Assembly: GCA_907165135.1 (NCBI GenBank)
Contig: OU015569.1
Location: forward strand, 12,152,001 to 12,216,000
DNA from: Oikopleura dioica
Lineage: Eukaryota; Animalia; Chordata
DNA: 64,000 bases
Direction of reading: 5' to 3'
Both the position numbers and the translations under genes were made by a program. Under the pieces are notes generated by a model. It was not told where the DNA came from. It saw only the letters and a list, made by a program, of their open reading frames with translations, and searched no databases. Below are positions 397 through 64,000 of the stretch, one piece after another (position 1 is the first letter of the stretch; each line of letters starts with the position of its first letter).

Positions 397-404
397 TTCA
401 GAAT

Positions 405-644
405 CTGGTCTCGAAAACCTGTGTAGAAAACCTGAGTCAGGTTTCGAGGACCTAAAATGAAAAGCCGCGTAGCGGCTTTTAAAACGAAGCCGCGAAGCGG
501 CTTCGCCATTATTAGAAATAAAATCAAAGAGATTGTATAGCGAAGCCGCTTCGCGGCTTCGTTTTTTAAAAAGCCGCTACGCGGCTTTTCATTTTAGGTC
601 CTCGAAACCTGACTCAGGTTTTTTACACAGGTTGCCGAGCCCAG
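405..644. mobile_element. MITE family 1 (CTGGGCTCGGCAACCTGTGTAGAAAACCTGAGTCAGG terminal inverted repeats), full palindromic copy
   Basis: Near-perfect 240-bp foldback; ttcagaat is duplicated at 397-404 and 646-653. Confidence 0.9.
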
Positions 645-720
645 GTTCAGAATGCTGTTAAAATTATTTTCATTCTTCAAAAATTGAAAAATCAAAACCA
701 GTGGCCGGCTACGGCAGTAA

Positions 721-1306: not shown

Positions 1307-2891
1307 TTACAGTAATACCCTGCTTTTCCTTCTCTCCTGTTTCCCTCTTTGCCACTCCAGCAGTTACTGTCTCAATAAACTTATTCTTCCATTCGAAACC
1401 GATTTCGTTTTTTTAAATGAAGAAAACAGTTTGTTTTTATTTATTTTTTTTTTACAGAATAGGTCATGTTTTATTCTCATGCATTTCGATAAGCAAAGGA
1501 GCTATCTCTTCGCCGCTATAATTTATATAAATCGATCACGTGTTTTGAATAAAAGAATGATTGTTTTTTTTCAGTCATCGAGTTCTAGTCAGAGTAATTG
1601 AATAAGCTTGCGGCAGAATATACCATTTTTCAGTTTCCATGTTGAATTCTTCGTTCACTAACTCAACGAACTCGTTGTTGTCTCCATAAAAAACAAAGTC
1701 GTTGTAGCTGTTGTAGCAGTTTTCCATCATTTCGTAAACGGCGTAGAATTCTCTTGAAACTGGAATTCTGATTTGAGAGCCGGAATGGTCGATGAGCGTG
1801 TTTTGGAGAATGAATTCGGAGTTTTCGATTCGGTCCAGCACCATTTGGTGGAAAATCATTGATCGGTCGGGATTTAGATATGCGCCGGTGACGGTTAGGG
1901 GACGGGAGAAGACGAAGTTGCCATGGAGGAGGACTTAATTTAATTTTTATTTGATTTTTAGTTTTGAATTTTTACCTTGCTCGAAATCGAAATTGGCAGT
2001 TATCGAGTGCTCTGTTCTGGTCATACGTGGTCAATCTTCGGGGTAGGGATCCCGAAGAATAGACGATTTTAAATACGCTCAATCTTCGGGGTAAAATCCC
2101 GAAGAGCGACCGATAGAAAATGCGGCCAATCTTCGGGGTCTCGAAAATCCGGAGACGAAGAATAACCGATGAACATTGTGGTGAATCTTCGGGGTCAAAA
2201 AAAACTTTGAAGATGAAAACTATCAAACAAATAGAAATCCGATGCTATTAATTTCAATAAATTTATGAATGAATAATAATTTTATGAATATTATTTTATA
2301 AAAGTGGCCGATATTTCCGACCAAAATTGAGAGATTTCCGAGAAAAAAATTCGTCCTAAAGATTGAAAGCCAATTAAAAACTCTCTTATTGAAAGTTTTT
2401 AACAGTAAACTATAGTAAACTATTTTAAAGTAGAAAATTATCAAATCTGATTGTCCCTTACCTCGGGGCTCCGCCCCTCGGTCCTAAGATGCCGGGGTCT
2501 AGTCTAGGGTTACTTAGGGTTAACCCTAGCCTATCCCCCTCGGGTAATTTGTTCCGTCATTTTTGAAGGTGCCCCCTAACCCTAACCTTAATTTTAGCAA
2601 ATACTATGATTTTAATTTTTTAATCGGAAAAAAGTCTTTCGGGAGCATGGAAGAAATTTGAAGGATACTCTAAGATACTTTTAAGCTGAGAACATTCGTA
2701 GGTTATCGACTTGGAAAGAGCGTTCTTCTGGTGAAGGAGAATCTCTCTGTCGCCTTCAATTATTATCAGTTAGTCCATATTATTACGGACGATTTTCTTG
2801 ATTTCAATAATAATTATTTCTTCCATTTTTTCATTTAAAAGAATGAATAGAATAGACGAAGTTTTCTGTTTTTGAAAGAAATCGTGCTGAT

Positions 2892-3308
2892 CAGAGTTGG
2901 TTAACCCCGGAACGCATGGCCATTTTTGCCAATTTCTGACCACTATTTAACCCAATATTGTCGCGATTTGGGCATAGAGAGAATAAAAATCCGGGTTTAT
3001 ATATTATAACCGGACTCTAAGCTACAAAAATATAACTTGAGCGTGATCATATTATCTGCGTATATCAAATATAATATGGGTTTTTTGATGAGCAAAATCG
3101 TATTACCCAAAAATGGGTCGTATATGCGTTCCGGCGTTAAAAAGTATACTTCACCCGCCCTTCAAAATGATTCATTTTAAATGAAGTATACTTCCGAGCC
3201 ATTTCGTACTTCAAATTGAAGTACGAAGCGCATTCTGCGCTTCGAGAATGAAGGGCGCCCTGCAGATTTTTGAAGCGCAGGGTGAATTATACTTTTTTAC
3301 CAACTCTG
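2892..3308. mobile_element. hAT-type MITE nested in the 2019-3526 element
   Basis: CAGAGTTGG...CCAACTCTG termini with a ~28-bp TIR once the inner insert is removed; 8-bp TSD gtgctgat at 2884-2891 and 3309-3316. Confidence 0.85.
2905..3136. mobile_element. piggyBac-type MITE nested in the left TIR of the hAT MITE
   Basis: TTAA on both sides (2901-2904, 3137-3140); TIR ccccggaacgcat versus cgccggaacgcat. Confidence 0.8.
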
Positions 3309-4700
3309 GTGCTGATAGCAACATTCATAAGGCGGGCGGATGATAGGAATTTCGATAACGCGGCAGCGAAATTTAGCACTCGCCGATCTCAAAAACACTC
3401 ATTTGACCCCGAAGAATAACCGCATTATATATTGGTAGCTCTTCGGGATCGTACCCCGAAGATTGAGCGTATTTAAAATCGACTATTCTTCGGGATCCCT
3501 ACCCCGAAGATTGACCGCATATGTCGTCTGTTCTTTCTTGTATAATTTTCCATCCACTATCATTTAAATATGTTCTGAACTTCAATCTTCTTAGAAGCAA
3601 TTCAATTTCGTTGTTTTGAAATTCTTGTTCTTCAAATTTCGGATTGAGGTTGAAGCCAGCCAAACTCCGCGGGTAAATCACCATTGTCAGATTTGTGAAG
3701 ATTTTTTCCAGAGTAAAATATCTTTTCATTTTCCAATCTTCGAATTTCAAATCATTTTCGAGTGCCCATCTCAAAAGCACCGAAACAGAAATGGGCACAC
3801 AGAGATCGCTTCCTTTTTGGTTTAAAACATTCTTTGTCACGTTTTTGAAGTCGAAATTGATCTGTTTCGTCAGTTTTTGTTTCAGACTGGCCATTGCAGT
3901 TGATTTCGTTAAATTCGGATCGTCTAAGCAAAAATCAGAAGACGCGTTTTCAAGAGAAATGATTTTTGACAAGCTTTGGATATCTTCGGTTGAGGGAGCG
4001 ATGCAAGTCTAAGAAAGGTTATTTTCTTTTAAAAAAAGTAAAGACTTACCTCAAGTTCTTTTTTGATGAATTCTCTTTCTTTTTCTTCGATTGGTTTGAA
4101 TAAAAGAGTCCAGGCCGTCTTCCACTCGCAAAGAATAAAAATATGAGTTTCAGATTGACACCATCCGTACATTCCGCCTATCTGCGGGCCATAAGAAAAG
4201 GCAGGAGACCCAGCATCTACGAAAAAAGATAAAACACGCGCATTTTTCATCAAGCTCAAAACTTACATAAACAGCTACTTTCTCTAAATCTGCTTCCTCT
4301 CCTCGCGTATCCCATCTCCCGATAACTCTTTCGTCCAGTCGATTCCTTAATAATGCTGAAATCAATCCATTTGGCTTCTCCATTTTTCAGAAGCACATTT
4401 TCCGGCTTCGTATCGCAATGAATAATTCCAATATTCTCTAAATACTCTCTTCCCTCTTCAACGCCAACCGCAATTTTCTTCCTTTCGTCCAAATTCAACT
4501 CATTACTCTTCAATTTGCTTCTCAAATCCGCGTCGCATTTCTCCATAATCGTGATCCAGCCAACACAGTCTTCTTTTTCCAAATCGCTGCTCAAAAACAC
4601 TTCGATGTTGCAGAAATTTTTGATCACATTTTTGTGAAAAGGAATTACTCGGGCATCGTCTCTTTCTTTGTTTTGGGCGATTTCGTATTCTTAAAAAATA

Positions 4701-5015
4701 CAGACAAAACGGACAATTCCGGAAGTTTTTTTTTCGGGAAAAAGCGCCAAATCTCCGGAATTGTCCGAACTCGACTGGCATTTTTTTTTTGCGTCAGAAG
4801 TGCCTTTTTTAAGGGTGTCAACCAGAAAATGGGCTTTTTTGACCCTTCTCTGATTTCTTTTTTCCTTTTTATTTGAAAAAGGTGGCCCTATATAGAGAAT
4901 AGGCCTCTCAGTTGAATTTTTTGTCTTAACTTTCCGGAATTGTGCGCTTGCAAAATTTTTCCAATTTCCCTCAAATCTCCGGAATTGCCCGTTCCGGAAT
5001 TGCCCGTTTTGTCTG
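4701..5015. mobile_element. Tc1/mariner-type MITE in a kinase copy A intron
   Basis: TA TSD; TIR cagacaaaacggacaattccggaa / ttccggaattgcccgttttgtctg. The homologous intron in copy B is only ~40 nt. Confidence 0.8.
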
Positions 5016-5945
5016 TAATAAAACAGATAAAAAAAAAATAAAAAAATAACAATTACCTTCCGAAAGATGAATTTCAAAGCCCAATTCTTCATTCCCCACA
5101 AACAACGCCGAGTCAAAAGCCTGCACCCGAACCGCCATTTCCAAACCTTCGAATTTTTCTTTCAAAACAATTGCTTCTCCTCCAGCTGAAATCAATTCAA
5201 AAGATTCATCGAGAATCCATTCTCCGGTTTCTTCTTTTAATTCCGAACGTTGAATTTTTCGTCCTTCGAAGCCTGGATTTTTCAAAAGAATCATTTTTTG
5301 AAATGAACTTATTGCCCGTTCTTCCTGTACTTTGCGTCCAGAAAACGGGACAGTTCCAGACAGCTTTCCTTCTCCATGTTCGAAAATGACCTCCTCCCAT
5401 ACAGCACACTCATCATCTTCAAACTCCATTCTGTCCATCGACAAAATCAACCTGTCCAAATCATTTCTGCTCGTTTTTCTCTTCAATTTCTTTTGAAACT
5501 TTTCCAGCCATTTCTCAACAGCTTCTCTTGTCAGTTCTTTTGGATGCGTCAATTCGTTTTCCAACTCATAAGACTCATTAGATTCTTGACTTGTCTCGTT
5601 CATTTTCTCTTCAACAGAAGCCTCTTGCAAACCTGCCGTCTTTTGGCCGGAATCGCCGCCGATTCGATCAAGAACAATGGGAATTCCTTCGCCTCCCAGA
5701 AGCTCGACCAAAGAACAGATTCTCTTGTTCAATTCGATTGCCCGATCCATCAGCTGTTTCTAATGATTTCTCGAAAGAAATAATAATCAACAAGAAAAGA
5801 AGTTTATTTTTGAAATGATGCTCGCTTCGCCGGTTTTAAGACCAGATCATAAAACTCTTCTGATTCCGCTTTTTGGGTTCGTTTTTACGATCTTACCGAC
5901 GAGCATAAGCGCGCTGATTATTGCCCCTCTTCCTTGTTGTCAAAT

Positions 5946-6100
5946 CTGAGTCAGGGTCTGAAAAGTTTTAAATAAGATTGAATGATTATTTGGCGAAGCC
6001 GCTTTGCGGCTTCGTTTTTTAAAGAAGCCGCTACACGGCTTTTCATAATAGATTTTTTCAGACCCTGATTCAGGTTTTCTACCCAGGTTGCCGAGGCTAG
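5946..6100. mobile_element. MITE family 1, partial copy
   Basis: ctgagtcagggtctgaaa ... gaccctgattcaggttttctacccaggttgccgag. Confidence 0.8.
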
Positions 6101-6171
6101 ATGAGGGGACTTACTGTCTTACTGACGAGCATTTTGAAGTTAGGGCAAGGGTCATTATTCTCTTTATTTAA

Positions 6172-6849: not shown

Positions 6850-7073
6850 TTAAATTATATTTAATAAAAACCAATGCAACAAACACATAAATATTTCGAC
6901 GAAAATCTTAAAATTCGCAGCTGCAAGTTCAAATAGCCAAAATCGCAAAGGGTGAAAACTTGGCAGAGGATTTGCCTTTTTCGCCGGTCAATATTTGACT
7001 CTGGAAAGGGTCCCATTTTTTGGGGTCCCACTCATCCAAGTCGAGCAAAAGCAAGAAGAGAAAAACAAGGAAG

Positions 7074-10000
7074 ATGAAATTTTTAGCTTTTTTAGTTTTC
7101 TGCGTTCTGGCGCAATTTGAAGACAAGAATAGAGACGCTTGCAATGAAATTGGTACAAAAACATCTTTCAAGGGAAAATTTCGAATTTCAAATTTCAATT
7201 TAGATTGCAACTACTTCCAGGATCCGTTTTCCTGGCCTTCTTGCTTTGTCAGAGGAGATGTGGCTGTTGATCTGTCTCTTCATCCCTGCAGGTTCTAGAG
7301 GCTTTTTAAGGAGGATTTTTGATTTATATTTTCGTTAATCTTAATAGGCTTAGGGTTTGAGACAACGAAGAAGCTAGAATAATTTTATCGACAAATCATC
7401 GTTATATTAAAATTCCTTACTCTTCCGCTCCCCTCGATCTTATGGTGTTTCGATTTTCAAATATTCGGGCAAACAGTTTTCGAAAAAACAACAGCTCTGT
7501 GTGTAAGTCACGGCTATCCTCGGCGCGACTTCGAACGCTTCGAACATAAAATAGCTCTAGAATTTTATTTTAACTTGAAGCCGCGAGGTTCTAGAGCTAA
7601 AACTTGAAGGACAGTAAATTATGTCATTCATAAATCCGAATGGGAATATTAAATTAAAGCTTATACTCTTAATTTAATTATTTAACTTCATTTAAATTGA
7701 TCAGGCGGCTACCTGAACCGGCTGGACCAAATTCAAAACTTCACGATCGACCTGAGCCACCGCGTTCGCGACCTGGAGGTGCGTCAAACGACGAACCCGC
7801 GCGAGTTCCTGCGCCAAATGGCGATCCTCTTCACCGACAGAATCGACGTCATGAAAAGCGACATGCTCGAGCAGCTGCAGAAGATCACGAAGCACGAAGA
7901 GCGTCTGGCCGAGTTTTACGGCGAACTGAGGCAGCACAGCAGCAGCGTCAGCACCAACGGCGCCAACATCGAATTCAACCAGAAAATGATCGAACAGCTG
8001 CGCCAGAAAATCGAGAAACTCGTTGACCAGAATTCTGAGCAGAATGTTTCAGAGTAAGGCTTTACGATTAAGGCTTCCTAGAAGAAATTTTTTGGGCTTG
8101 GCAACTTGCGAAGAAAGCCTGAGTCAGGGTCTGAATGATCTGATGATAAAAGCCGCGCAGCGCCTTTTAAAAACAAAAACGAACGACGCTGAGGAGCGAG
8201 CTCATGCGCCAGATTGCCGAAGCGATCGAGGTTTTCGAACGCGACTTGCAAAGGAACAGATTTTCAATCAGCCATTTAGTCATTCAGAGCAGTTCTAGAG
8301 CTATTCTAGAGCTGCATCTATGGAAAATCTGGTAACAGAACCTCGGAAATGATCAGAGACACAATCATCAAGAACGACGTTTCTCACCGAGTGGAGAAAT
8401 TAGAGAAGAACCAAGTCTACATCCTAGACACCGGGACTCATCTTCTCGCCAGAGCTAATCATCAACTTGATCAATTAATTAAAAATACTTTGAGGCAGGC
8501 AATTTCAAATGCCAATCCTTTTTGCAGAAAAGTCTCATTTTGTCCCCCTTTTCTTCCCAGGCTCAGAGTGGTTAAACTTGATCTTGAATTTCTTAATCCT
8601 AAATTTTAATTGCCCGACTTGACAAATGCCCGTGAATCGCCCTAATTAGTAGCTTCTGATGAGTCCCCTTCAGACCAGATCCAGGAAATTTCGCTCAAGC
8701 AGAATTTCGGCGACTTTCCAAAGCGAAAAACGAACTCGACGACGCTGAAGAAACTGCCGGATTTTGAAGAGCAGCTTTTGAAAACGGAAAAGTCGGAAAA
8801 CGGAAAAAGTTGCGAGTGCGATATTCCTCCGGCAATCGGCCAGGCGATTATTCAGCAGCAGTTGAGAATGGATCTCGTTCTTTCGGAGAAATCGACCATG
8901 GCCTTGGAATTGAAGTCGCGAAAGGAAGAAAATGAGTTTTTGGCGATCGAAGTTCAGAAATTAAAAGACGAGAGACAGCAGATTTTGAGCGTCGTTTCTG
9001 AATACCAGCACGAAGTCAAGGTAAGATATGGGCTCGGTAATCAAAGTGGAAAACCTGTGTCAGGGTCTGAATCCCTTTATTAAAGATCTTTCAAAGCCGC
9101 GACGAAGCTCTGATCCAAGAGCACGAAAAACGCCTCAACGCCCAGGCCGAGTCGATTTCCAGCACCGCAGCAGTGGCGCACTTTACGAAGCATCGGGGTG
9201 CGCGTCAGTTAAGGCGTTTTTGCCATTTGCGTCCTTTAAGGCGTTGCGTCAGTTAAGGCACTTGCGTCGCTGAAAAATGACTAGTGGAATTCTGATATCA
9301 ACTAGGGTCTGCTAGATTTCTTGATAAAATATTACTTTACCAATTCCTAGGGTAAGTGCCAGAGTTAATATTTTCTCAAGAAAATCTTTTTATATTCAGT
9401 TATAAGCTGAACCGCTGGTTTATGATTGAATTTGAAGTTTTTCGTGATAGAATAAATTTATTATTTGTAAAAATAAAGGTTCGACACTAAAATTTTAGTT
9501 AATTTTCTCAGATCGTTTTCAATACGTATCGTATTTAAATTATTTTGAATACGCTGTTAAATTTGAGATTGAAATGAGAATTTCAAGGATAGTTACAATC
9601 GAGGTAATTTAGCAGACCCTAGTTGATATCAGAATTCCACTAGTCATTTTTCAGCGCCTTAACTGACGCAAGTGCCTTAACTGACGCAATGCCTTAAAGG
9701 ACGCAAATGGCAAAAACGCCTTAACTGACGCGCACCCGAAGCATCGCTTACAAAGTAAGTGAAGCTCTTTCCGAGTTCAAAAATGCTCAAAGAAATTGAT
9801 TAAAGACGCGCGATTCCGTTGCGCCGGCCACGGGAAAAAGAAAGGAAGCTTCTGCTTCAACTTGAGCAAGGACAAGCGCTCGTGGGAGGCGGCCGAGCAG
9901 AGATGTAACAGACAGGGCGGATCTTTGGCGGTGATCAAGGACGAGGACACGATGTTGTATATTACGAATTTGATTAGAGGCAGCTCTTATGTAAGTCAAG

Positions 10001-10501
10001 CAAGATGGCAATTATCTTCGAATTGACTGAAATTCCAGTCGACAACCATAGCTAAAACCTGAGTAAGGGTTCGAAAATGCTCAACAGAGAGCCGCGTAGC
10101 GGCTTTAACAAAAACGAAGCCGCAAATCGGCTTCGATAGTTTTAGAAAATTAATTCAAATGGTTACTTGGCGAAGCTTTCTGTTGAGCAGCTTAAAACTC
10201 TGACCCAGGTTTTTAACAGCACTGATTGAAATAACTGTTCAGGACACTTCCTACTGGGTTGGATTGTCGCTGGACAAAGAGAGCGACCGCCTCAGCTGGG
10301 TAGACAACACGACCGTCACTGAGAGCTCTTTCCAAAACTGGTACGGAGAAATCCGCCCGACAGTAAGTTCTACCACTCATTCCCTTCTTTCAACGATTCT
10401 AGCGCTCAGAGCGGTGCATTCAGTCCGCGGGCCTGCAGTTCGGCTACAAATGGTACCCCTCAAAATGCGACCGCGAGTTCCGCTACATTTGCCAAGTCTA
10501 A
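7074..10501 (+). CDS. Secreted protein: signal peptide, Cys-rich N-terminus, long coiled coil, C-terminal C-type lectin-like domain
   Basis: MKFLAFLVFCVLA...; coiled-coil exons 7705-8053, ~8312-9020 and 9086-9194. CTLD exons 9806-9990, 10243-10362 and 10402-10501 give FCF..SWEAAEQRC..QGGSLA, YWVGL, NW, C..KW....C....YIC. No EPN/WND motif. Middle exon joins are uncertain. Confidence 0.7.
9196..9737. mobile_element. Mutator/foldback-like MITE inserted in a lectin exon
   Basis: 9-bp TSD gaagcatcg (9187-9195, 9738-9746); GGG...CCC termini; TIRs of ~120 bp. Confidence 0.85.
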
Positions 10502-10704: not shown

Positions 10705-13550
10705 TTACAGTCTTCGAGTTTTAGTCAGAGTAATTGAATAAGCTTGCGGCAGAAGATACCATTTTTCTGTTTCCATGTTGAATTTTTCGTTCACTAACTC
10801 AAGAAACTCGTTGTTGTCTCCATAAAAAACAAAGTCGTTGTAGCTGTTGTAGCAGTCTTTCATCATTTCTTCATTGGCGTAGAATTCTCTGGAAACAGGA
10901 ATTCTGATTTGAGAGCCAGAATGGGCGATGAGAGTGTTTTGGAGAATGAATTCGGAGTTTTCGATTCGGTCCAGCACCATTTGGTGGAAAAGAATTGAAG
11001 AGTCGGGATTTAGATAGGCGCCGGTGACGGTTAGAGGACGGGAGAAGACGAAGTTGCCATGGAGGAGGACTGAATTTAAGTTTTATTTGATCTTTACCTT
11101 CGAGTTCATAGCCTTGCTCAAAATCAAAATTGGCATTTATCAAGTCGTCGCTTGTGCTTTCTTGTGTTATAATTAGCCATCCACTTGGGTTCAAATAAGT
11201 CCTGAACTTGAATCTTCTGAGAAGCATTTCAATTTCGTTGCTTTGAAATTGTTGTTCTTCGAATTTCGGATTGAGATTGAAGCCAGCCAAACTCCGCGGA
11301 TAAATCAGCATTGTCAGTTTTGTGAAGATTTTTTCCAGATTAAAAAATTCTTCCATTTCCCAATCTCCAATTTTCAAATCATTTTTGAGTGCCCATCTCA
11401 AAAGCACCGAAACAGAAATGGGTACACAAAGATCGCTTTCTTTTTGGTTTAAGGGATCACCCCCCGATTTTCCCAACTTTGACCCCTATCTACTTTTTAC
11501 TCGTCTTGCGTGTGGGCCTGTATAGGGGCTCAAATTGAAGCCCGTTTCTTGACGAGCAAATGCATGCATGATAAGCCCCTAGTTATAAGATTTACTTATG
11601 CATTAGAGGCTGTCAAAGTGACTTAGGTTGCCAAAAACGGCCATTTTCGGTCATTTTCAAGTTGTATCTACTTTTTTTTGGGCTTATGTAGTTCCAAAAT
11701 TTCTTCAGTTTTATAACGTCTAGACCCTCGGCTACATTTGCATGCATGATCATGATGATTGAAAAAGTAGAAAATTTTTTTCTTATTATAAAACTTTCAG
11801 CCGTCATTTTAGCGATTTTTTGGAGTCTTTCTGCTCTCTAGCGCCACCAAGAGATGAATTTCTTTCTCGAAAACTGTTTATTTCTTGATAAGGGCGTTAT
11901 ATGCTTTCAAATAAGCCCCTATTCGCCTCGTTATGAAGACATTCAAATTTTGAAAAAATCGAAAATTTCTGCTAAGTATAGAGTGTAATGCAACTTCAAC
12001 GCGCTCTCACGAGAAATCACGTGATCTAAGGGCCTTGACATAATGGTAAAAAATGACCCTCAGATCATGGAGAATTTAAATATGCACCGCTCGATACTTT
12101 TTGGGAAAATTTTTCGGATCGGGGGGGGATCCCTTAAAACATTCTTCGTCACATTTTTGAAGTCGAAATTGATCTGTTTTGTCAGTTTTTGTTTCAGACT
12201 GGCCATTGCAGTTGATTTCGTCAAATTCGGATCGTCTAAGCAAAAATCAGAAGACGCGTTTTCAAGAGAAATGATTTTTGACAAGTTTTGGATTTCTGAG
12301 ATTGATGGTCTTTCGTTTGAGAGCCAGCCAGCATTGCAAGTCTAAGAAAGGTTATTTTCTTAAATAAAAAGTAAAGACTAACCTCAAGTTCTTGTTTGAT
12401 GATTTCTCTTTCTTCTTCTTCGATTGGTTTGAATAAAAGAGTCCAGGCCGTCTTCCACTCGCAAAGAATCAAAATATGAGGAGAAGATCCAAGCCCTCCG
12501 AAGTATTCGCCTATCTGCCCGCCAGTAGAAAAAGCAGGAGACCCCGCATCTACGAAAAAAAAGAGATAAAACACGAGCATTTTTCAACAAGCTCAAAACT
12601 TACATAAACAGTAGGTATTTCTAAATCTGCTTCCTCTCCTCGCGTAACCCATCTCCCGATAACTCTCTCGTCCAGTTAATTCGCAAATAATGCTGAAATC
12701 GATCCATTTTGCTTCTCTATTTTTCAGAAGGACATTTTCCGGCTTCTCATCGTAATGCCAAATTCCAATATTCCCCAAATACTCGTATCCCTCTTGTACG
12801 CCAATCGCAATTTTCTTCCTTTCGTCCAAATTCAACTCATTATTCTTCAATTTGCATCTCAAATCCGCGTCGCATTTCTCCATAATCGTGATCCAGCCAA
12901 CACAGTCTTCTTTTTTAAAGTCGCTGCTCAAAAACACTTCGATGTTGCAGAAATTCTTGATCACGTTTTTGTGAAAAGGAATCACCCGGGCATTGCCTTT
13001 TTTCTTGTTTTGGGCGATTTCGTATTCTAAAAAAAAAAATAAAAAAATATAAGAAATTAAAATTACCTTTCGAAAGATGAATTTCAAAGGCAAATTCTTC
13101 ATTCTCCGCAAACAGCGCCGGATCAAACGCCTGCACCCGAACGGCCACTTCCAATTCTCCGAATTTTTCTTTCAAAACAATCGCTTCTCCTCCAGCTGAA
13201 ATCGATTCCAAAGAGTCATCTAGAATCCATTCTCCGATTTCTTCTTTTAATTCCGAACGTTGAATTTTTCGTCCTTCGAAGCCTGGATTTATCGAAAGAA
13301 TCATTTTTTGAAATGAAGTTATTTCCCATTCTTCCTCATATCTTCCAGACAGCTTTCCTTTTCCATGTTCGAAAATTACCTCCTCCCATCGACCACAACG
13401 ATCATTTTCAAACTGCATTCTGTCCATCGACAAAATCAACCTGTCCAAATCATTTCTGCTCGTTTTTCTCTTCAATTTCTTTTTAAAATCTTCCAGCCAT
13501 TTCTCAACAACTTCTCCTGTCAGTTCTTCTGGATGCGTTGAAATTTTCAT
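10705..13550 (-). pseudogene. Divergent kinase fused to a papain-like domain, copy B; interrupted by a TTAA element
   Basis: Paralogous exon by exon to copy A (HYDEKPEN, DFS, NQKESDLC, FHQMVL...QNT). The insertion 11453-12133 splits KNVL|NQK. Confidence 0.75.
11453..12133. mobile_element. Kolobok-like non-autonomous element
   Basis: TTAA TSD (11449-11452, 12134-12137); 16-bp TIR gggatc(a/c)ccccccgat. The site is empty in copy A. Confidence 0.85.
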
Positions 13551-13996
13551 TTTGTATAAAAAGCGATAACCAAAATTCGGAAAGAGTGATTTCAAAATGT
13601 TTTTCAATCGCGGAAGATCGTAAGCTAGCGAGAGACCGCACTTTTGACTCTGAGTTTACGACTTCTTTTTATTATCACAATTCAAAGTAGGGAACAATAG
13701 TCTATAGACAATAATGTGGAATTTAATCAATTTGAAGACATTTGGCTTTCAATTTTTTAAAATATTAATTGTCTTTATTTAGATTCTAATTTATAAGAAC
13801 CAATGCAACAGACACATAAATATTTTGACATTAAATTCGCAGTTGCAAGTTCAAATAGCTAAAATCGCAAAGGGTGAAAACTTGGCAGAGGATTTGCCTT
13901 TTTTCGCCGGTCAATATTTGACTCTGGAAAGGGTCCCAGTTTTTAGGGTCCCACTCATCCAAGTCGAGCAAAAGCAAGAAGAGAAAAAGAAAGAAG

Positions 13997-14722
13997 ATGA
14001 AATTTTTATTCTTTTTAGTTTCCTGCTTTCTAGCGCAATTTGAAGACCAAAATAGAGACGCTTGCAATGAAATTGGTACGAAATTTTTCACGGGAAATAT
14101 GAGGGTCTCAATTTTCAAATTTAGATTGCAACTACTTCCAGGATCCGTTTTCTTGGCCTTCTTGCTTTGTGAGAGGAGATGTGGCTGTAGATCTGTCCCT
14201 TCATCCCTGCAGGTTCTAGAGTCTTCCTTGCTGGGCTCGGCAACCTGAGTAGAAAACCTGAGTCAGCTTCTGAAAGAGCAAAGATGAAAAGCCGCGTATT
14301 TTTGCTCTTTCAGACCCTGACTCAGGTTTTCTACTCAGGTTGCCGAGCCCAGCTTCCTTGTACTAGTCGATTTGGAGCGTTTTTGTAGGTTACTCCTCGC
14401 TGATTGCAAAAAAGAGCCGTTCTACGCCGGAAAGTGCAGAAAAGAAGAATACGGCGATCAAATTATAATTTCCGTCGAATCCGAATACGGGTAAGTTTTT
14501 GCTCCAAAAGAAGAGGATAATTTGATATTTAGGCTTTGCGAGCCGAGTTACTGTAGCAGAATCGGCGTTTGCTTTTACGAGTACTTTGACACTTCCGTTT
14601 GGAAATGCATGTAAGTCTCTTTCAAGAAATTAAGTTTTGTTAATTAATTTTCAAGCTGCCCGACTGGCTACCACGGAGAACACTGCCAACACAAGTACGT
14701 CGCCCGATACCGCAATGGATAA
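13997..14722 (+). CDS. Small secreted protein with a C-terminal EGF-like domain (5 exons)
   Basis: Exons 13997-14075, 14125-14212, 14389-14490, 14533-14610 and 14656-14722 join in frame via GT-AG. They end in CEPSYCSRIGVCFYEYFDTSVWKCICPTGYHGEHC, a six-Cys EGF pattern. Confidence 0.8.
14231..14352. mobile_element. MITE family 1, short intact copy in an intron
   Basis: Near-perfect TIRs; 8-bp TSD cttccttg at 14223-14230 and 14353-14360. Confidence 0.9.
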
Positions 14723-14825
14723 TGGAAATCGACACTTTTTTTGTTTGAAAGACAGCTTGTATTTCTCGAACAAAAAGTGACTTTCACAATAAAAAATGAA
14801 AAAAAAATCAAACTTCCATGTAAAT

Positions 14826-15860
14826 GTTTGGGCTCGAAAACCTGGGTAGAAAACCTGAGTCAGGGCCTAAGGTCCTAAACTGGCTTTAAGGAAAAGCGGT
14901 GTGGAAGACCCTGACTCAGGCTTTAAACACAGGCTTGCGGCTGGGCACGGCAGCCTGTCTTCAAAACCTGAGTCAGGTTTTGAATACCTCAAATAAAAAG
15001 CCGCGTAGCGGCTATTTTAAAAACGAATCCTTTTGCGGCTACGTTTTTTAAAAAGCCGCAACGCGGCTTCTCATTTTAGTTCTTCAAAACCTGACTCAGG
15101 TATCCACACAGGTTGCCGAGCCCAGGTTCGCAGACCCCAACTTGTTTCATTGAAAAGAAATCGATTTAAACTTAAATTTGGGAAATTTTATTACAGGTAT
15201 TTATATAAAAATTAAAAAAAAAAGGAAATTGGTAACTGTACATTTTTATGAGGGTCGTTCGGTCTTGACATGAGGTTTGGCTGAAACGTCTTAATTCTCC
15301 AAAGCTTCGTTCACCGCGAAGAGACCCAAATTGTACATCCAGCGCTGCATACTTTGCATTAACTCGAAAGCGTTTACGTACACTTCTCCTGAAAACAAAT
15401 CCAGTCAGAAAAGAAACAACAACTTTGAGCTTTATCAAATGAGCTATCTTTCAAAAGCAAAAATTAATAGTCTTCAGAAGAGCTTTGATATAAAAGAGTT
15501 TTCAGGAACCTGTGTAGAAAACCTGAGTCAGGTTTTGAAAGATTTTTATGAAAAGCCGCGTAGCGGCTTTTTAAAAACGAAGCCGCAAAGCGCATTCGCC
15601 AAAATTACTATTTCAATCATTTTTTAATTCTGACCACACTGTGTAGAAAACCTGAGTCAGGTTCTGAAAAAGCTGAAATGAAAAGCCGCGGAGCGCTTTT
15701 AAAACGAAGCCGCAAAGCGGCTTCGCTAGAGTATAAAAAAGGTTTTAATTATAATTTAGCGAATCCGCTTCGCGGCTTCGTTTTAAAAGCCGCTCCGCGG
15801 CTTTTCATTTAATCTCTCAAGGTCTGACTCAGGTTTTCTACACAGGTTTGCGAGCCTAGA
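14826..15860. mobile_element. Cluster of about four MITE family 1 copies
   Basis: Repeated aaaacctgagtcagg / cctgactcaggtttt arms with aagccgc..gcggctt hairpins. Confidence 0.85.
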
Positions 15861-15876
15861 TTCTGAGCTACAGGGC

Positions 15877-17275
15877 CTAGCTACTTAAAAAATCTAGATT
15901 ACCTTCGTTCATTATGCTGCGCAGAGCTTCATTGTCGAGAGAATTGATTGCTTCAAGATCTTTAGAGAGATTGGCGAGTGGATTGTCCAACAACATCGGC
16001 GCCGGGGATGATTTTTCGTGATCTTCTTTCGTCGATTTTTCTTTGTTCGAGTAGCGACAAGTTTTGGGGAAGCGATTCGACCATTGGCAGGCGCCCTTGT
16101 TGTGGCAGAAACATCTGTTGGACCTGGAGTTTTCGCCGCAAGTGATGTTGCAACGGACTCGGTTCTTTGTCGCGTTGCATTCCCACTCGGCATTGTCGGG
16201 GAAGCGAGGGCAGGAGGCGAATTGGGGGAAGACGTTGATGAAATCGGAATTCGCAAATTGGGATCTCGGGGAATCAGCTGAGAAAAGCTCTGGTTTTTCG
16301 GGAAGTGGGACTTCTATGATTTCGTACTCTTCCTCCTCCAATTCTTCTTCTTCTTCTTCCTCTTCTTCTTCATCATCGTAATTCGGAAGGGATGGAATAT
16401 TCATGTCGATATCCATGTGCATGTACTTCAAGTATTCAATCGTCGACTTGGGTTTCTCCGTCGTCGTTGCTTCCTCCGTCGTTGTTGCCTCTGTCGTTGT
16501 TGTGCTTGTCGTTGTTGTCGATGTTGTTGTAGAAGTTGTGGTAGAAGTTGTTGTGGTGGTGGTGGTTGTTGTTTTTTTCGTGGTGGTTTTCGGAGGACCT
16601 ACTCTTGGCGGCCTCCAGCCCGAGTTCCACCTTCCTACTACCGGAAGTGCCGCTTCGCACTCGTCGTTGAGATCCGTGTCCCAGGAACAGCCAACGTACA
16701 AGCTCACGAACCCAAGCTCGCGGTAACACTTGCACATTCTCGTCCCCCTTCTCTTCTGTTTTTGCATTTTAGCTTGCAAATCGCTTCGTTTCCGACGCCG
16801 TTTTCGCACTCCCACTGGCCGCATTCTTTCTTGTTTTTGCAGATGAAAGTTTTTCTTCTTCGCAAACATCTTCCTGAAATAATTTATTCAGAAAAATTTC
16901 TTTTTCAAATAATATTTTTATTATTAATAAAATTTTAAAATTTGATTTTTAATAAAAAATTATTCACGAATATGAAAATTTTATTAAAAATCTTTTACTA
17001 TTTTAAAAATTATTTATTCTAGTTTTTTGATAATTTATTACCGCTGGTTTTTCCTCCATCGTAAAAATTCCAGATTGAGCATTATTTTTGGCGATGTTGA
17101 TTTTGAAATGACATCTGGATTTTCTGCGATTTTCGGCTTCGGAATCTCTGTGAGGACTTTCTGCTCTTCTGGCGTTTGTCTGGTGATGTGCGAAGCGTGT
17201 CCTAGAATTTTTTCTCTAGAAACGAAGCTAGAAGTGACTTTTACCGGACAATAAAAGGCCGACGAACGTTTTCAT
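15877..17275 (-). CDS. Probably secreted mucin-like protein: basic region, Cys module, poly-Thr, poly-Glu, second Cys module
   Basis: Exons 17275-17245 (MKTFVGLLLSG), ~17200-17040 and 16873-15877 join in frame. Contains CPRFPDNAEWECN...CNITC...CFC...CQW. Confidence 0.65.
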
Positions 17276-19266: not shown

Positions 19267-22200
19267 TTAAGGACTTTTCTTTTCGCTGAGTTCAACTGTA
19301 CCTATTGCGCGCACGTCCAAGCAAGCCTGGTGATTAGTTTTGGCGAAGCTTCTTTGTTTCTTCATATTCTCCAAATATCGCCTCGTGCTGCTCGAAATCA
19401 GCTGGAGCGAAATTAAGTTGAAATTCAAAATGATTATTTTTACTTACTTTGAATCGCGTTTGAAACTCGGAGGCGAAGAAAGAGTAGAAAAGAGGGTTGA
19501 TAGCTGAAAAAAGGAAAAAACAACTGTTTGGGTAGGTAACTTAGCAACCTGTGTTGAAAACCTGAGTCAGGGTTTGAAATATCTTTCATGAAAAGCCGCG
19601 CAGCAGCTTTTCTTAAAGAAAGCCGCAACGCGGCTTTGCCAGAATTTAAGGGTATAGTCATCAATCGGCCAAATCGACGACTAAACCCTTACTGTAGCTT
19701 ACTGTACCTGGCAGGAGCCAGATGAGAGCATCAACAGTCGTTTTAAAGCGATCGCAGTGGCTTCGAGATAGGCGAATATTCCAAACGCGCATGATGTGAT
19801 AAATCTAACGAAAAGGACATTCCGAGGACTAGAACTTTTTCTTATCCGAATTACATGAAAGGGGGTGTAGCAAACAACGAGGCCCAGCATCAAGCTTGAA
19901 ATCATGTAAACAGATCTCCGGTTGATTCCCCTGAAAAGCAAACATAAATTAATCAATCTTTCAAAGCGCTAGAATCCGTCGAAGCTGGTTAATTATTTTC
20001 TGGAGTGGACCAACTTGCCTGTTTGTATTGCCGACAAAGTTTGTCTTCGAATGACCGACGAGTTTCTTCTGAAACGGCAAAAATGAAGTTGATCAATCAA
20101 TTTTTCATTTTCATGGGTTTTGATTAGTAAATACCTTTCAAAAGGGCTCAAGAGAAAGAAACTGAAATTTCTTGCTCTTTTTCTCATATAATGAGCGTAG
20201 AGACACCCTTATTTTTTCTCAGAATCAAGAACCTGACATTTAAACCTGTGTAAATACCTGAGTCAGAAAGTTTGAAAGCTTAGTCCTGATTCTGGGAAGA
20301 AAAAATAAGGGTGTCTCCATGATAATGAAATATTATGAAATATTAACAAAGAGACACCCTTATTTCTTATACTCAGAATCAAGGATGACATTTAAACCTG
20401 TGTAAAAACCTGATTCAGAGAGTTTTAAGCTAAGTCATGATTCTGGGAAGAAAAATTAGGGTGTCTCTATGTTAATATCATAATATTTTATTAGCATAGA
20501 GACACCCTAATTTTCTCTTCCCACAATCAAGGATGACATTAAAGCCTGTGTAAAAACCTGAGTCAGAGAGTTTAAAAGCTTAGTCTTGATTCTGGGAAGA
20601 AAAATAAGGGTGTCTCTATCTTATTAACATATTTCATTAACATAGAGACACCCTTATTTTTCTTTCCTAGAATCATGACTTAGCTTTTGAACTCTCTGAC
20701 TCAGGTTTTTACACAGGTTTAAATTTGAGGTTCTTGATTCTGAGAATGAAAAATAAGGGTGTATCTTTTCTTTTTCTCAAGAATCTGGAGCGCCCTAATC
20801 CTGCGATTTGACGATCTTGCAGAGGAGGGAGCCGTAGCTCAGCAAAAAGCAGACAATTGGCAAGAAATAGCCGAAAACGAAGAGACAGATGATGAAATCT
20901 ACTTTTCGGTTACTTTGCCCCTCTGTTACTGCCAGTCGCAGTCTGTTACTGTAGCTCGAACCGAATGTCTGAATAGGGCTGGGTGCTTTTGCATCCGCAC
21001 TCGTGGAAATCCGATGATCCGATGTTAAGGTCGTTCAATGAAGAAGAATCGTCGCTAAAATGAATTTTTAAAAACGATCGACTTCAATTTTTGTCAACTT
21101 GAAATTCGAAGAAGAGTCGTTTTTGATCGGCTTGCACTCCATTTTGCCAGTTTTGCTCCAGTCTGAAAAGTTCAATTTTTTTAAGTTGAAGACTTTGGTG
21201 TAAACTTTATGTGCCTGTTTTATGCAAACAAGTGCACACTTTTACATCACGTTTACAATTCCTTTATCAGCTACTTGTCTAACCAGGCTTTAGTCTTTAT
21301 CACTTCTGAATTTAGCGGCAGACTGCACGTTTTCAGAAATAGCCCACTTCCCACGTTTTTTATCAACGTATCCGAAAAGGATGCAGATCGGAGAGCACGT
21401 GACCCTGACTGTTCAACCCGTTGTTTGACAACTAAAGGATTGGTGATAAGGAGGCTGAGTTGGAAAAGAAAGAATTACTTTTTGGTCTTCACCATTTTCA
21501 ATTTGCGACAAAATTTGAGTAGGTAGCTATCCGAAGCTGCTGATTCGCTGGTAAGCCAAATATAGGCCTCTTATTGGCTGAAATTTCATGCCAGCCAATG
21601 AGGGGCCAAGTAGCGGGCTGGCGCCAGGAACCGACAAAAAATTTCGACAAATTTTGCGTGGGCGGCTACTCGGCTGCTTCCTCCGAATCCGGGCTTCTGA
21701 TTGGTTGAAAAATTCCATGCAAAATTTGTCGAATTTTTGTCGATTCCAGACACCTCCCTCAAGTAGCTGACCACGCAAATGATGTCGCTCAGAGATTGTC
21801 ACCTCTGAACTAGGCTCGGCAGCCTGTGCATTTAAACTTTGTCAGGGCCCTGACTCAGGTTTTAAACACAGGCTGCCGAGCCCAGTTTCCGACACAAACA
21901 AGAAAAGACTTCTATCTTACTTATTTATCTTCGTAAATTGAATATTAAGTAGAGTATTGTCTCGCTTGTAAACAGCATTCGCAATTTGAGTGTTAGATAA
22001 TTGAATCGACTCCAACAAGAAGGTTGTAGCTTGAACACGAAACAAATCTTCTTGTTTTTAATTTCAACTCGTCAATTAGAAGAAAGTCCCAGAACTCGAA
22101 AAATTAACAGATCTGGAATCGATGTCCGGCCGCGGAAAAAAACATCCTTGGGAAAAACACGACTTTTTTGGAGAAAGTTATTTTTACTTCAATCAGCGAA

Positions 22201-59167: not shown

Positions 59168-64000
<4,833 letters not shown>

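What the first reader, a model, noticed from the sequence alone, without database searches (positions are those of the whole stretch)
1575..5750. Kinase fused to a cryptic papain-like cysteine protease (two paralogues)
Seen: after splicing and removing the transposon, the C-terminal domain has Q-x5-C (NQKGSDLC; copy B NQKESDLC), then RPLTVTG, then H-x15-N (FHQMVLDRIENSEFILQN). The Cys-His distance is 131 residues in copy A. Established: papain has Gln19, Cys25, His159 and Asn175 (distances 6, 134, 16) and a PVSV strand before His. All four residues are conserved in both paralogues. The N-terminal kinase keeps HxDxKPEN and the DFx Asp but has the beta3 Lys replaced by Arg (AVR). Inference: an intracellular kinase-protease fusion, possibly a lineage-specific defence, signalling or cell-death switch. 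I know of no named animal family with this architecture, but I could not search.
Basis: partly seen in the sequence, partly recalled or inferred. Interest (0 to 1): 0.8.

Follow-up and report, generated by a model that had tools for sequence, protein, structure and literature searches.

The report
Two transposon-broken kinase-protease fusion genes
These are two neighbouring copies of an unstudied gene family of the tunicate Oikopleura dioica that joins an unusual protein kinase to a very divergent papain-type cysteine protease, but in this genome each copy has a transposon inside the protease-coding exon and is probably a dead allele.

Summary
The C-terminal domain has no Pfam or PDB sequence match. 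A confident AlphaFold model of an intact paralogue, however, gives only papain-fold (clan CA) peptidases as its 50 best structural matches (Z up to 10.3). Cys starts the central helix, and His and Asn sit on the following beta-hairpin. In the relatives I fetched, Gln (170/174), Cys (170/173) and His (43/47) are almost invariant; Asn is less so (35/46). The kinase part has a true protein-kinase fold, but the beta3 Lys is Arg in every family member examined.

The genome is Oikopleura dioica. At least 27 GenBank proteins belong to the family, and all are annotated only as kinases.

Both copies here are interrupted in the protease exon by private transposons: 1.5 kb in A and 0.68 kb in B. As they stand, they encode truncated proteins. 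RNA reads showed expressed paralogues but none from copy A. Function is untested.

This scan had already found the family on other DNA of the same genome. A papain-like domain fused to a kinase also has a published precedent (EDR1). Verdict: observation confirmed, interpretation partly supported, moderate interest.

The parts
5057..5750 (-). Copy A exon 1: N-terminal helical region plus kinase N-lobe (glycine loop SAGGEAIV, beta3 AVRV). It ends in phase 1 before a GT donor. Codons 1-67 (5750-5550) are A-specific.
4690..5056 (-). Copy A intron 1 (GT-AG, 367 nt). It holds an A-specific 309-nt insert (4710-5018) rich in CAATTCCGGA-type repeats.
4267..4689 (-). Copy A exon 2: kinase core with HCDTKPEN and IDFS. 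It matches Pfam Pkinase at 40.2 bits (cut-off 31.7).
4050..4216 (-). Copy A exon 3: end of the kinase (GSPAFSYGPQ, CEWKTAW helix).
3520..4008 (-). Copy A exon 4, 5' part: conserved linker (LDDPNLTKS, NVTKN) and the helical half of the papain-fold domain, with Gln (3819-3817) and Cys (3801-3799).
2019..3519 (.). Insertion private to copy A, about 1.5 kb. It is a non-autonomous DNA transposon with 119-nt terminal inverted repeats (2022-2140 and 3405-3523) and subterminal GGTCAATCTTCGGGGTA repeats. It is flanked by the imperfect direct repeat AGAACAGACGACATA (3534-3520) / AGAACAGAGCACTCGATA (2018-2001). Reading into it gives ...DDICGQSSG and then a stop at 3501-3499.
1976..2018 (-). Copy A exon 4, 3' part (..ITANFDFEQ plus the first base of a Val codon). 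It is in frame with the 5' part once the insertion and one repeat copy are removed.
1575..1933 (-). Copy A exon 5, after a 42-nt GT-AG intron (1975-1934): beta-barrel half of the papain-fold domain with RPLTVTG, His (1850-1848) and Asn (1802-1800). Stop codon at 1577-1575.
12383..13550 (-). Copy B exons 1-3 (13550-13067, 13026-12604, 12549-12383): kinase with AVRV, HYDEKPEN and IDFS.
12135..12341 (-). Copy B exon 4, 5' part: linker up to ..KNVL.
11453..12134 (.). Insertion private to copy B: a 682-bp miniature transposon with GGGATC(C/A)CCCCCCGAT terminal inverted repeats and a TTAA target duplication. It lies directly before the NQKESDLC codons. Reading into it reaches a stop at about 12062-12060.
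10705..11452 (-). Copy B rest of exon 4 (11452-11113: NQKESDLC and the helical half), GC-AG intron (11112-11070) and exon 5 (11069-10705: RPLTVTG, His, Asn, stop).

Best explanation
A and B are tandem paralogues, 86-91% identical in DNA. They belong to a large family, known so far only from Oikopleura dioica and marine metagenome fragments.

The family protein has four parts in one chain:
1. A helical N-terminal region.
2. A compact, atypical eukaryotic protein-kinase domain. Its beta3 Lys is Arg in every family member examined and it is a non-RD kinase. The catalytic Asp, Lys and Asn and the DF(G/S) Asp are kept.
3. A conserved but probably flexible linker.
4. A roughly 230-residue papain-fold (clan CA) cysteine-peptidase domain, too divergent for any sequence model.

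Inferred: in intact paralogues the peptidase domain is catalytically competent. Cys on the helix N-terminus acts as nucleophile, His on the beta-hairpin as base, and Gln forms the oxyanion hole. The kinase-like domain more likely regulates, targets or senses than acts as a standard kinase.

Shown: each copy in this assembly carries its own DNA-transposon insertion inside the peptidase-coding exon. A would therefore end after the Cys-bearing half, without His and Asn. B would end before Gln and Cys. Apart from the insertions both reading frames are open, so these are most likely young null alleles in a birth-and-death family.
For: Organism and family:
- 27 'unnamed protein product [Oikopleura dioica]' proteins match at E 1e-59 or better.
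- 73 exon-sized metagenome fragments match.
- Only 95 hits at E<=1e-3 were found among 1.84 billion representatives.

Fold:
- The model of intact paralogue P0186:395-697 has mean pLDDT 76, with the core (residues 77-303) mostly above 90.
- All 50 best rows of the exhaustive structural search are clan CA peptidases: xylellain Z 10.3 over 159 residues, Der p 1 10.0, cathepsin B 9.7, C39 domain of PCAT1 9.6.
- Foldseek and the ESM Atlas give the same clan.
- Cys81 opens helix 81-96, His214 lies in strand 211-222 and Asn230 follows strand 225-229.

Conservation: Gln 170/174, Cys 170/173, His 43/47, Asn 35/46.

Kinase:
- Pfam Pkinase matches above its cut-off.
- The model has pLDDT 81 and hits CAMK-type kinases at probability 1.00.
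- DAPK1 is the nearest PDB sequence, E 4e-7.
- The R-for-K change is present in all 15 full-length family members aligned and in both copies.

Insertions:
- Inverted repeats are present.
- Each insertion is absent from the other copy.
- The frame is restored on removal.

Selection between A and B: dN/dS is about 0.3-0.45 in the protease exons and about 1 or more in kinase exons 1 and 3.
Against: - No enzymatic evidence of any kind exists.
- The model's coordinates could not be read, so Cys-His geometry is unmeasured.
- Z of about 10 is only moderately above the background of 7-8 that the tool quotes.
- Asn is replaced in a quarter of members, and a few members have Ser for Cys.
- The RNA runs may come from another O. 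dioica lineage. Most laid reads were only 90-95% alike, so the absence of copy A reads is weak evidence.
- The insertions could be polymorphic or removed from the RNA.
Confidence: 0.75

Rival explanations
1. The two genes are functional here. The insertions are either removed from the pre-mRNA as new introns (Oikopleura tolerates G*-AG introns), or they are alleles of the sequenced individual that segregate alongside intact alleles.
For: Both reading frames are otherwise intact. In A, a GT inside the transposon end (3515-3514) and an AG at 2013-2012 would splice in frame. In B, a GG donor at the TTAA and the AG at 11443-11442 would splice in frame (read). Earlier notes of this scan describe similar TTAA elements in exons of other genes (unchecked).
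Against: No read joins across either insertion, and no read lies fully on copy A in three bulk runs and one single-cell RNA run. For B no scarless splice is possible, because the element is followed by TTAA-A and not by AG. The only in-frame option deletes the oxyanion Gln.
Confidence: 0.15
2. The papain-fold domain is an isopeptidase for ubiquitin or a ubiquitin-like modifier, rather than a general endopeptidase. This would make the protein a kinase-deubiquitinase signalling module. This reading refines the best explanation rather than excluding it.
For: A and B have no signal peptide, no propeptide match and no conserved cysteine pairs. Structural matches include UfSP1/2, ZUFSP, ATG4, coronavirus PLpro and viral tegument-like deubiquitinases.
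Against: These matches score lower (Z 6-7.7) than C1 and C39 peptidases (Z 9-10.3). No ubiquitin-binding element was identified in A or B.
Confidence: 0.25
3. The domain is a catalytically dead papain-fold module used only for binding, and the family consists of pseudoenzyme pairs (pseudokinase plus pseudoprotease).
For: The kinase has Arg instead of the beta3 Lys in every member examined. Some members have Ser for Cys or lack Asn.
Against: Near-invariance of Gln, Cys and His across about 170 sequences at 20-80% identity is what purifying selection on a catalytic site would produce.
Confidence: 0.1
4. The papain-like motif spacing is a coincidence, and the C-terminal region has another fold or none.
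For: No Pfam hit and no PDB sequence hit even at E<=10.
Against: Three independent structural searches return clan CA only, covering residues 72-303 of the model. Distant relatives carry the classic H..(Y/F)x(F/V)KNS signature.
Confidence: 0.02

Closest known systems
Papain family C1 peptidases (xylellain, Der p 1, cathepsin B, caricain)
   Same: Best structural matches (Z 9.2-10.3, 150-167 aligned residues). Same order Gln-Cys-His-Asn, with spacings 6 / 130-133 / 16 against papain's 6 / 134 / 16. Cys lies on the helix N-terminus, and His and Asn on a beta-hairpin.
   Different: No sequence-level match to PF00112 or PF03051. No signal peptide, propeptide match or disulfide pattern. No Trp after the Asn. 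Fused behind a kinase.
C39 bacteriocin-processing peptidase domains (PCAT1, ComA)
   Same: Equally good structural matches (Z 9.0-9.6, rmsd about 3 A). They are a compact cytosolic clan CA domain that works as one module of a larger multidomain protein.
   Different: Bacterial, fused to ABC transporters, about 130 residues. No Pfam C39 or C39_2 hit here.
EDR1/CTR1-type proteins (Pfam EDR1, PF14381, fused to a Raf-like kinase)
   Same: The published case of a papain-like-fold domain joined to a protein kinase in one chain (PMC10318531).
   Different: In EDR1 the transglutaminase-like domain lies on the N-terminal side of the kinase (from my own knowledge of EDR1/CTR1). It is found in plants and protists and is related to C71/C93. 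No PF14381 hit here, the domain order is reversed, and the kinase is CAMK/DAPK-like rather than Raf-like.
Death-associated protein kinases and other CAMK-group kinases
   Same: Nearest kinases by sequence (E 4e-7) and by fold (probability 1.00). They share the non-RD HFD-type catalytic loop.
   Different: Beta3 Lys is Arg. The C-lobe is short, with little after the helix-F equivalent in the model. DFG is DFS in copies A and B.

Membership tests
Clan CA (papain-fold) cysteine peptidases | Two-lobed fold: a helical lobe with the nucleophile Cys at a helix N-terminus, and a beta-barrel lobe carrying His | tested here: met
   Model of paralogue P0186:395-697. Cys81 starts helix 81-96 and His214 lies in strand 211-222. 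The top 50 structural matches are all clan CA, with Z up to 10.3. This was tested on a paralogue, not on the joined A or B sequence.
Clan CA (papain-fold) cysteine peptidases | Catalytic residues in the order Gln, Cys, His, Asn/Asp, conserved in the family | tested here: met
   All four are present in A and B. Family census: Gln 170/174, Cys 170/173, His 43/47, Asn 35/46.
Clan CA (papain-fold) cysteine peptidases | Cys and His side chains within ion-pair distance | not testable with these tools
Clan CA (papain-fold) cysteine peptidases | Cys-dependent peptidase or isopeptidase activity | not testable with these tools
   Needs an enzyme assay or an activity-based probe.
Peptidase family C1 (Pfam PF00112 / PF03051) | Match to the family's sequence model above its gathering score | tested here: not met
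   No hit for the A or B exons. Among 42 domain sequences, 2 distant ones hit PF03051 at 13-15 bits against a cut-off of 22. The profile against PDB sequences gave nothing at E<=10.
Peptidase family C39 (PF03412 / PF13529) | Match to the family's sequence model | tested here: not met
   No hit. The resemblance is structural only.
EDR1 domain (PF14381) kinase fusions | Match to PF14381, with the papain-like domain N-terminal to the kinase | tested here: not met
   No PF14381 hit. Here the domain is C-terminal to the kinase.
Eukaryotic protein kinases (PF00069) | Match to the Pkinase model, and a kinase fold | tested here: met
   Exon 2 of A scores 40.2 bits against a cut-off of 31.7. The paralogue model hits kinases at probability 1.00.
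Eukaryotic protein kinases (PF00069) | Catalytic residues: beta3 Lys, HRD Asp, catalytic-loop Asn, DFG Asp | tested here: inconclusive
   The Asp, Lys and Asn of HxDxKxxN and the Asp of DF(S/G) are present. The beta3 Lys is Arg in A, B and all 15 full-length relatives aligned. Activity therefore cannot be predicted.

The most novel reading that the evidence does not exclude
The family is a lineage-specific, fast-turning-over set of single-chain 'kinase-sensor plus cysteine-protease-executioner' switches used in innate defence or cell death in a chordate. The conserved linker (LDDPNLTKS) would serve as an autoinhibitory or autocleavage segment. It would also define a new clan CA peptidase family.
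Probability: 0.12. Interest if true: 0.8.

Novelty: new variant of a known kind. Interest (0 to 1): 0.45.

Why it matters
The family has dozens of members in a model chordate and all are annotated only as 'protein kinase domain-containing'. It hides a cysteine-peptidase domain that no sequence model recognises. That is a gap in peptidase classification (MEROPS/Pfam).

Placing a kinase-like module and a protease in one chain suggests a self-contained signalling or defence switch, and this can be tested directly.

The two copies in this window add a view of the family's turnover. After a recent duplication, each copy was hit by a different transposon in the same exon.

These two loci are not the best entry points for experiments. 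Intact paralogues are.

Tried and rejected
1. Sequence routes to papain all failed:
   - Pfam on every exon and on 42 domain sequences.
   - A profile against all PDB sequences at E<=10.
   - ESM-Atlas features, which gave only a weak hint: one viral cluster with 11% Peptidase_C1.
2. Foldseek against the PDB gave no hit at E<=0.001. The fold call therefore rests on the exhaustive aligner and on the agreement between lists.
3. RNA: every laid read fitted only partly, on poly-A/T runs or on the most conserved kinase motifs. Their loose ends translate to paralogue sequences such as ELFQIDDEN and TNVRNELKN.
4. My first exon 2 acceptor (4649-4648) was replaced by 4691-4690 after the family alignment.
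5. I first took the insertion in A to cause a frameshift. This was resolved when the flanking imperfect direct repeat was recognised.
6. A regex census of the Gln/Cys site failed and was redone with an HMM alignment.
7. The short E4c segment in the dN/dS script was mis-registered and should be ignored.
8. I first assumed the genome was a nematode's, because of the tiny introns. The protein hits showed it is Oikopleura.
9. No other copies of either transposon lie in the window, so their copy number in the genome was not established.
Full report
**What is there**

The region holds a five-exon gene on the minus strand (copy A, 5750-1575). A paralogue lies 9 kb away (copy B, 13550-10705). Introns are tiny (41-50 nt), apart from intron 1 of A. 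I first took the genome for a nematode's. Protein searches show it is the tunicate Oikopleura dioica: 27 GenBank 'unnamed protein product [Oikopleura dioica]' entries match at E 1e-59 or better. UniRef names them only 'Protein kinase domain-containing protein'.

**Checking the observation**

- NQKGSDLC in A and NQKESDLC in B.
- RPLTVTG.
- FHQMVLDRIENSEFILQN.
- AVRV, H(C/Y)D(T/E)KPEN and IDFS.

The Cys-to-His distance in A is 130 or 131 residues, depending on how the insertion is removed. Papain has 134.

The family alignment corrected two splice sites. Exon 2 begins at 4689 in A and 13026 in B, which adds YEIAQNK... The last intron of B is a 43-nt GC-AG intron; the alternative GT would give an impossible 28-nt intron.

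**Both copies are broken**

Copy A:
- It carries a roughly 1.5-kb element with 119-nt terminal inverted repeats at 90% complementarity. The element also has subterminal GGTCAATCTTCGGGGTA repeats.
- The element sits in the loop between the two lobes of the protease domain.
- It is flanked by an imperfect 15/18-nt direct repeat. Keeping either copy of that repeat restores the frame.
- Read as it stands, A ends ...DDICGQSSG-stop. It keeps Gln and Cys but loses His and Asn.

Copy B:
- It carries a 682-bp TTAA-flanked miniature element directly before the NQKESDLC codons.
- The open frame stops about 24 codons into the element, before any catalytic residue.

Each insertion is absent from the other copy. 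The copies are otherwise 86-91% identical in DNA, so both insertions postdate the duplication.

Both frames are otherwise open. Between A and B, dN/dS is about 0.3-0.45 in the protease exons and about 1 or more in kinase exons 1 and 3. The overall value is 0.64, based on small counts.

**RNA**

I laid three bulk oligo-dT runs and one single-cell run carrying the same species label on 1400-5900. No read lay fully on copy A and no joint crossed the insertion.

The partial reads sit on poly-A/T runs and on the most conserved kinase motif. Their overhangs translate to paralogue sequences such as ELFQIDDEN, NIRTELKNE and TNVRNELKN. The family is therefore transcribed, but copy A was not detected.

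Most laid reads were only 90-95% alike. The runs may come from another O. dioica lineage, so this negative result is weak.

**The C-terminal domain**

Sequence methods see nothing:
- No Pfam family for the exons or for 42 domain sequences.
- No PDB sequence at E<=10 for the family profile.

A profile of the Cys-bearing exon found only 95 proteins at E<=1e-3 among 1.84 billion representatives. These are Oikopleura proteins and marine metagenome fragments.

I therefore folded an intact natural paralogue (P0186:395-697) with a 42-row alignment that included the window's exons. Mean pLDDT was 76, with the core at residues 77-303 mostly above 90.

Structural searches on this model:
- The exhaustive structural search returned only clan CA peptidases in its 50 best rows: xylellain Z 10.3, Der p 1 10.0, cathepsin B 9.7, PCAT1 C39 domain 9.6, then staphopain, UfSP, ATG4, ZUFSP and PLpro. 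They cover residues 72-303.
- Foldseek was weak, but nearly all of its best-ranked matches belong to the same clan.
- The ESM Atlas gave C39, C10 and C1 clusters.

Cys81 opens the central helix. His214 and Asn230 lie on the next beta-hairpin.

Distant relatives carry the textbook H..(Y/F)x(F/V)KNS signature, and two give sub-threshold hits to Peptidase_C1_2 at the Cys.

Census over all fetched sequences: Gln 170/174, Cys 170/173, His 43/47, Asn 35/46. I conclude that this is a papain fold, probably active in intact members, and not assignable to any existing family.

**The kinase**

- Pfam Pkinase matches above its cut-off.
- The model of P0186:1-400 has pLDDT 81 and pTM 0.80. It matches CAMK-type kinases (CDPK, DCLK1, DAPK) at probability 1.00.
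- DAPK1 is the nearest solved sequence, E 4e-7.
- The beta3 Lys is Arg in A, B and all 15 full-length relatives aligned. The catalytic loop is non-RD. Most relatives keep DFG, but A and B have DFS.
- In the model the C-lobe is short after the helix-F equivalent.
- Whether it phosphorylates anything cannot be told from sequence.

**Mechanism (inferred)**

In intact paralogues a cytosolic clan CA peptidase or isopeptidase is tethered to a kinase-like regulatory or sensing module. The tether is a conserved but flexibly modelled linker with invariant D, N and T in LDDPNLTKS. This linker could be an autoinhibitory or cleavage segment.

Several features fit birth-and-death evolution, as seen in defence or conflict genes:
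- lineage restriction;
- many paralogues;
- tandem duplication;
- fast-evolving kinase exons;
- frequent breakage.

This is a guess.

**Comparison with what is known**

I found no paper on Oikopleura that describes this family. A survey of papain-like proteins notes that EDR1 (PF14381) domains are often fused to kinases (PMC10318531). The general architecture therefore has a precedent. Here the domain order, the kinase type and the peptidase lineage all differ, and PF14381 does not match.

**Earlier notes of this scan**

This family has already been reported on several other pieces of the same genome, with the same conclusion. I reproduced the fold, the family range and the lack of literature independently. 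What this locus adds is the pair of private transposon hits.

I did not build, search or fold the joined (spliced, insertion-free) proteins of A and B.

Noticed in passing
window 6850-7304 and 13779-14225 (+ strand): Each kinase-protease copy is paired head-to-head with a duplicated gene. Its first exon encodes a signal-peptide-like start (MKFL(A/F)FLV..AQFED(K/Q)NRDACNEIGTK), and the DNA is 89% identical between the two. The duplication unit therefore includes a divergently transcribed, probably secreted partner.
   Followed up: partly
window 398-651, 5964-6102, 8093-8177, 10054-10159, 14231-15866, 19544-19641: A repeat of roughly 100-230 bp occurs in both orientations many times around the two genes, at 77-93% identity. 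It is probably another miniature transposon family.
   Followed up: no
window 4710-5018: Intron 1 of copy A holds a 309-nt insert, absent from copy B, that is rich in GGCAATTCCGGA-type repeats.
   Followed up: no
L001:1395-3455 (protein P0140, ENA metagenome contig): An intronless 686-residue metagenomic relative has the order protease-like, kinase, protease-like. The N-terminal protease-like copy has Thr for His and His for Asn, while the C-terminal copy is intact. A separate kinase gene lies just upstream. The organism is unknown.
   Followed up: partly
window 3936-3901 and 3846-3826 (linker of copy A); same in B: Two invariant N-x-T-K motifs (PNLTKS and NVTKN) lie in the poorly modelled linker before the catalytic Gln. 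They could be a repeated recognition motif or glycosylation sequons. Some Norwegian-strain paralogues start with a hydrophobic helix (MLEFSILAILATCIAGMI), so a cytosolic location is not proven for the whole family.
   Followed up: no
proteins P0076 and P0092: Two family members have Ser in place of the catalytic Cys (..SNLSVPIS..). They may be inactive or serine-type variants.
   Followed up: no
window 63228-63674 (- strand): An unrelated protein-kinase exon, about 30% identical to exon 2 of copy A.
   Followed up: no
window 15877-16869 (- strand): A 330-codon open frame with a long Thr/Ser-rich, mucin-like run and an acidic Glu run.
   Followed up: no
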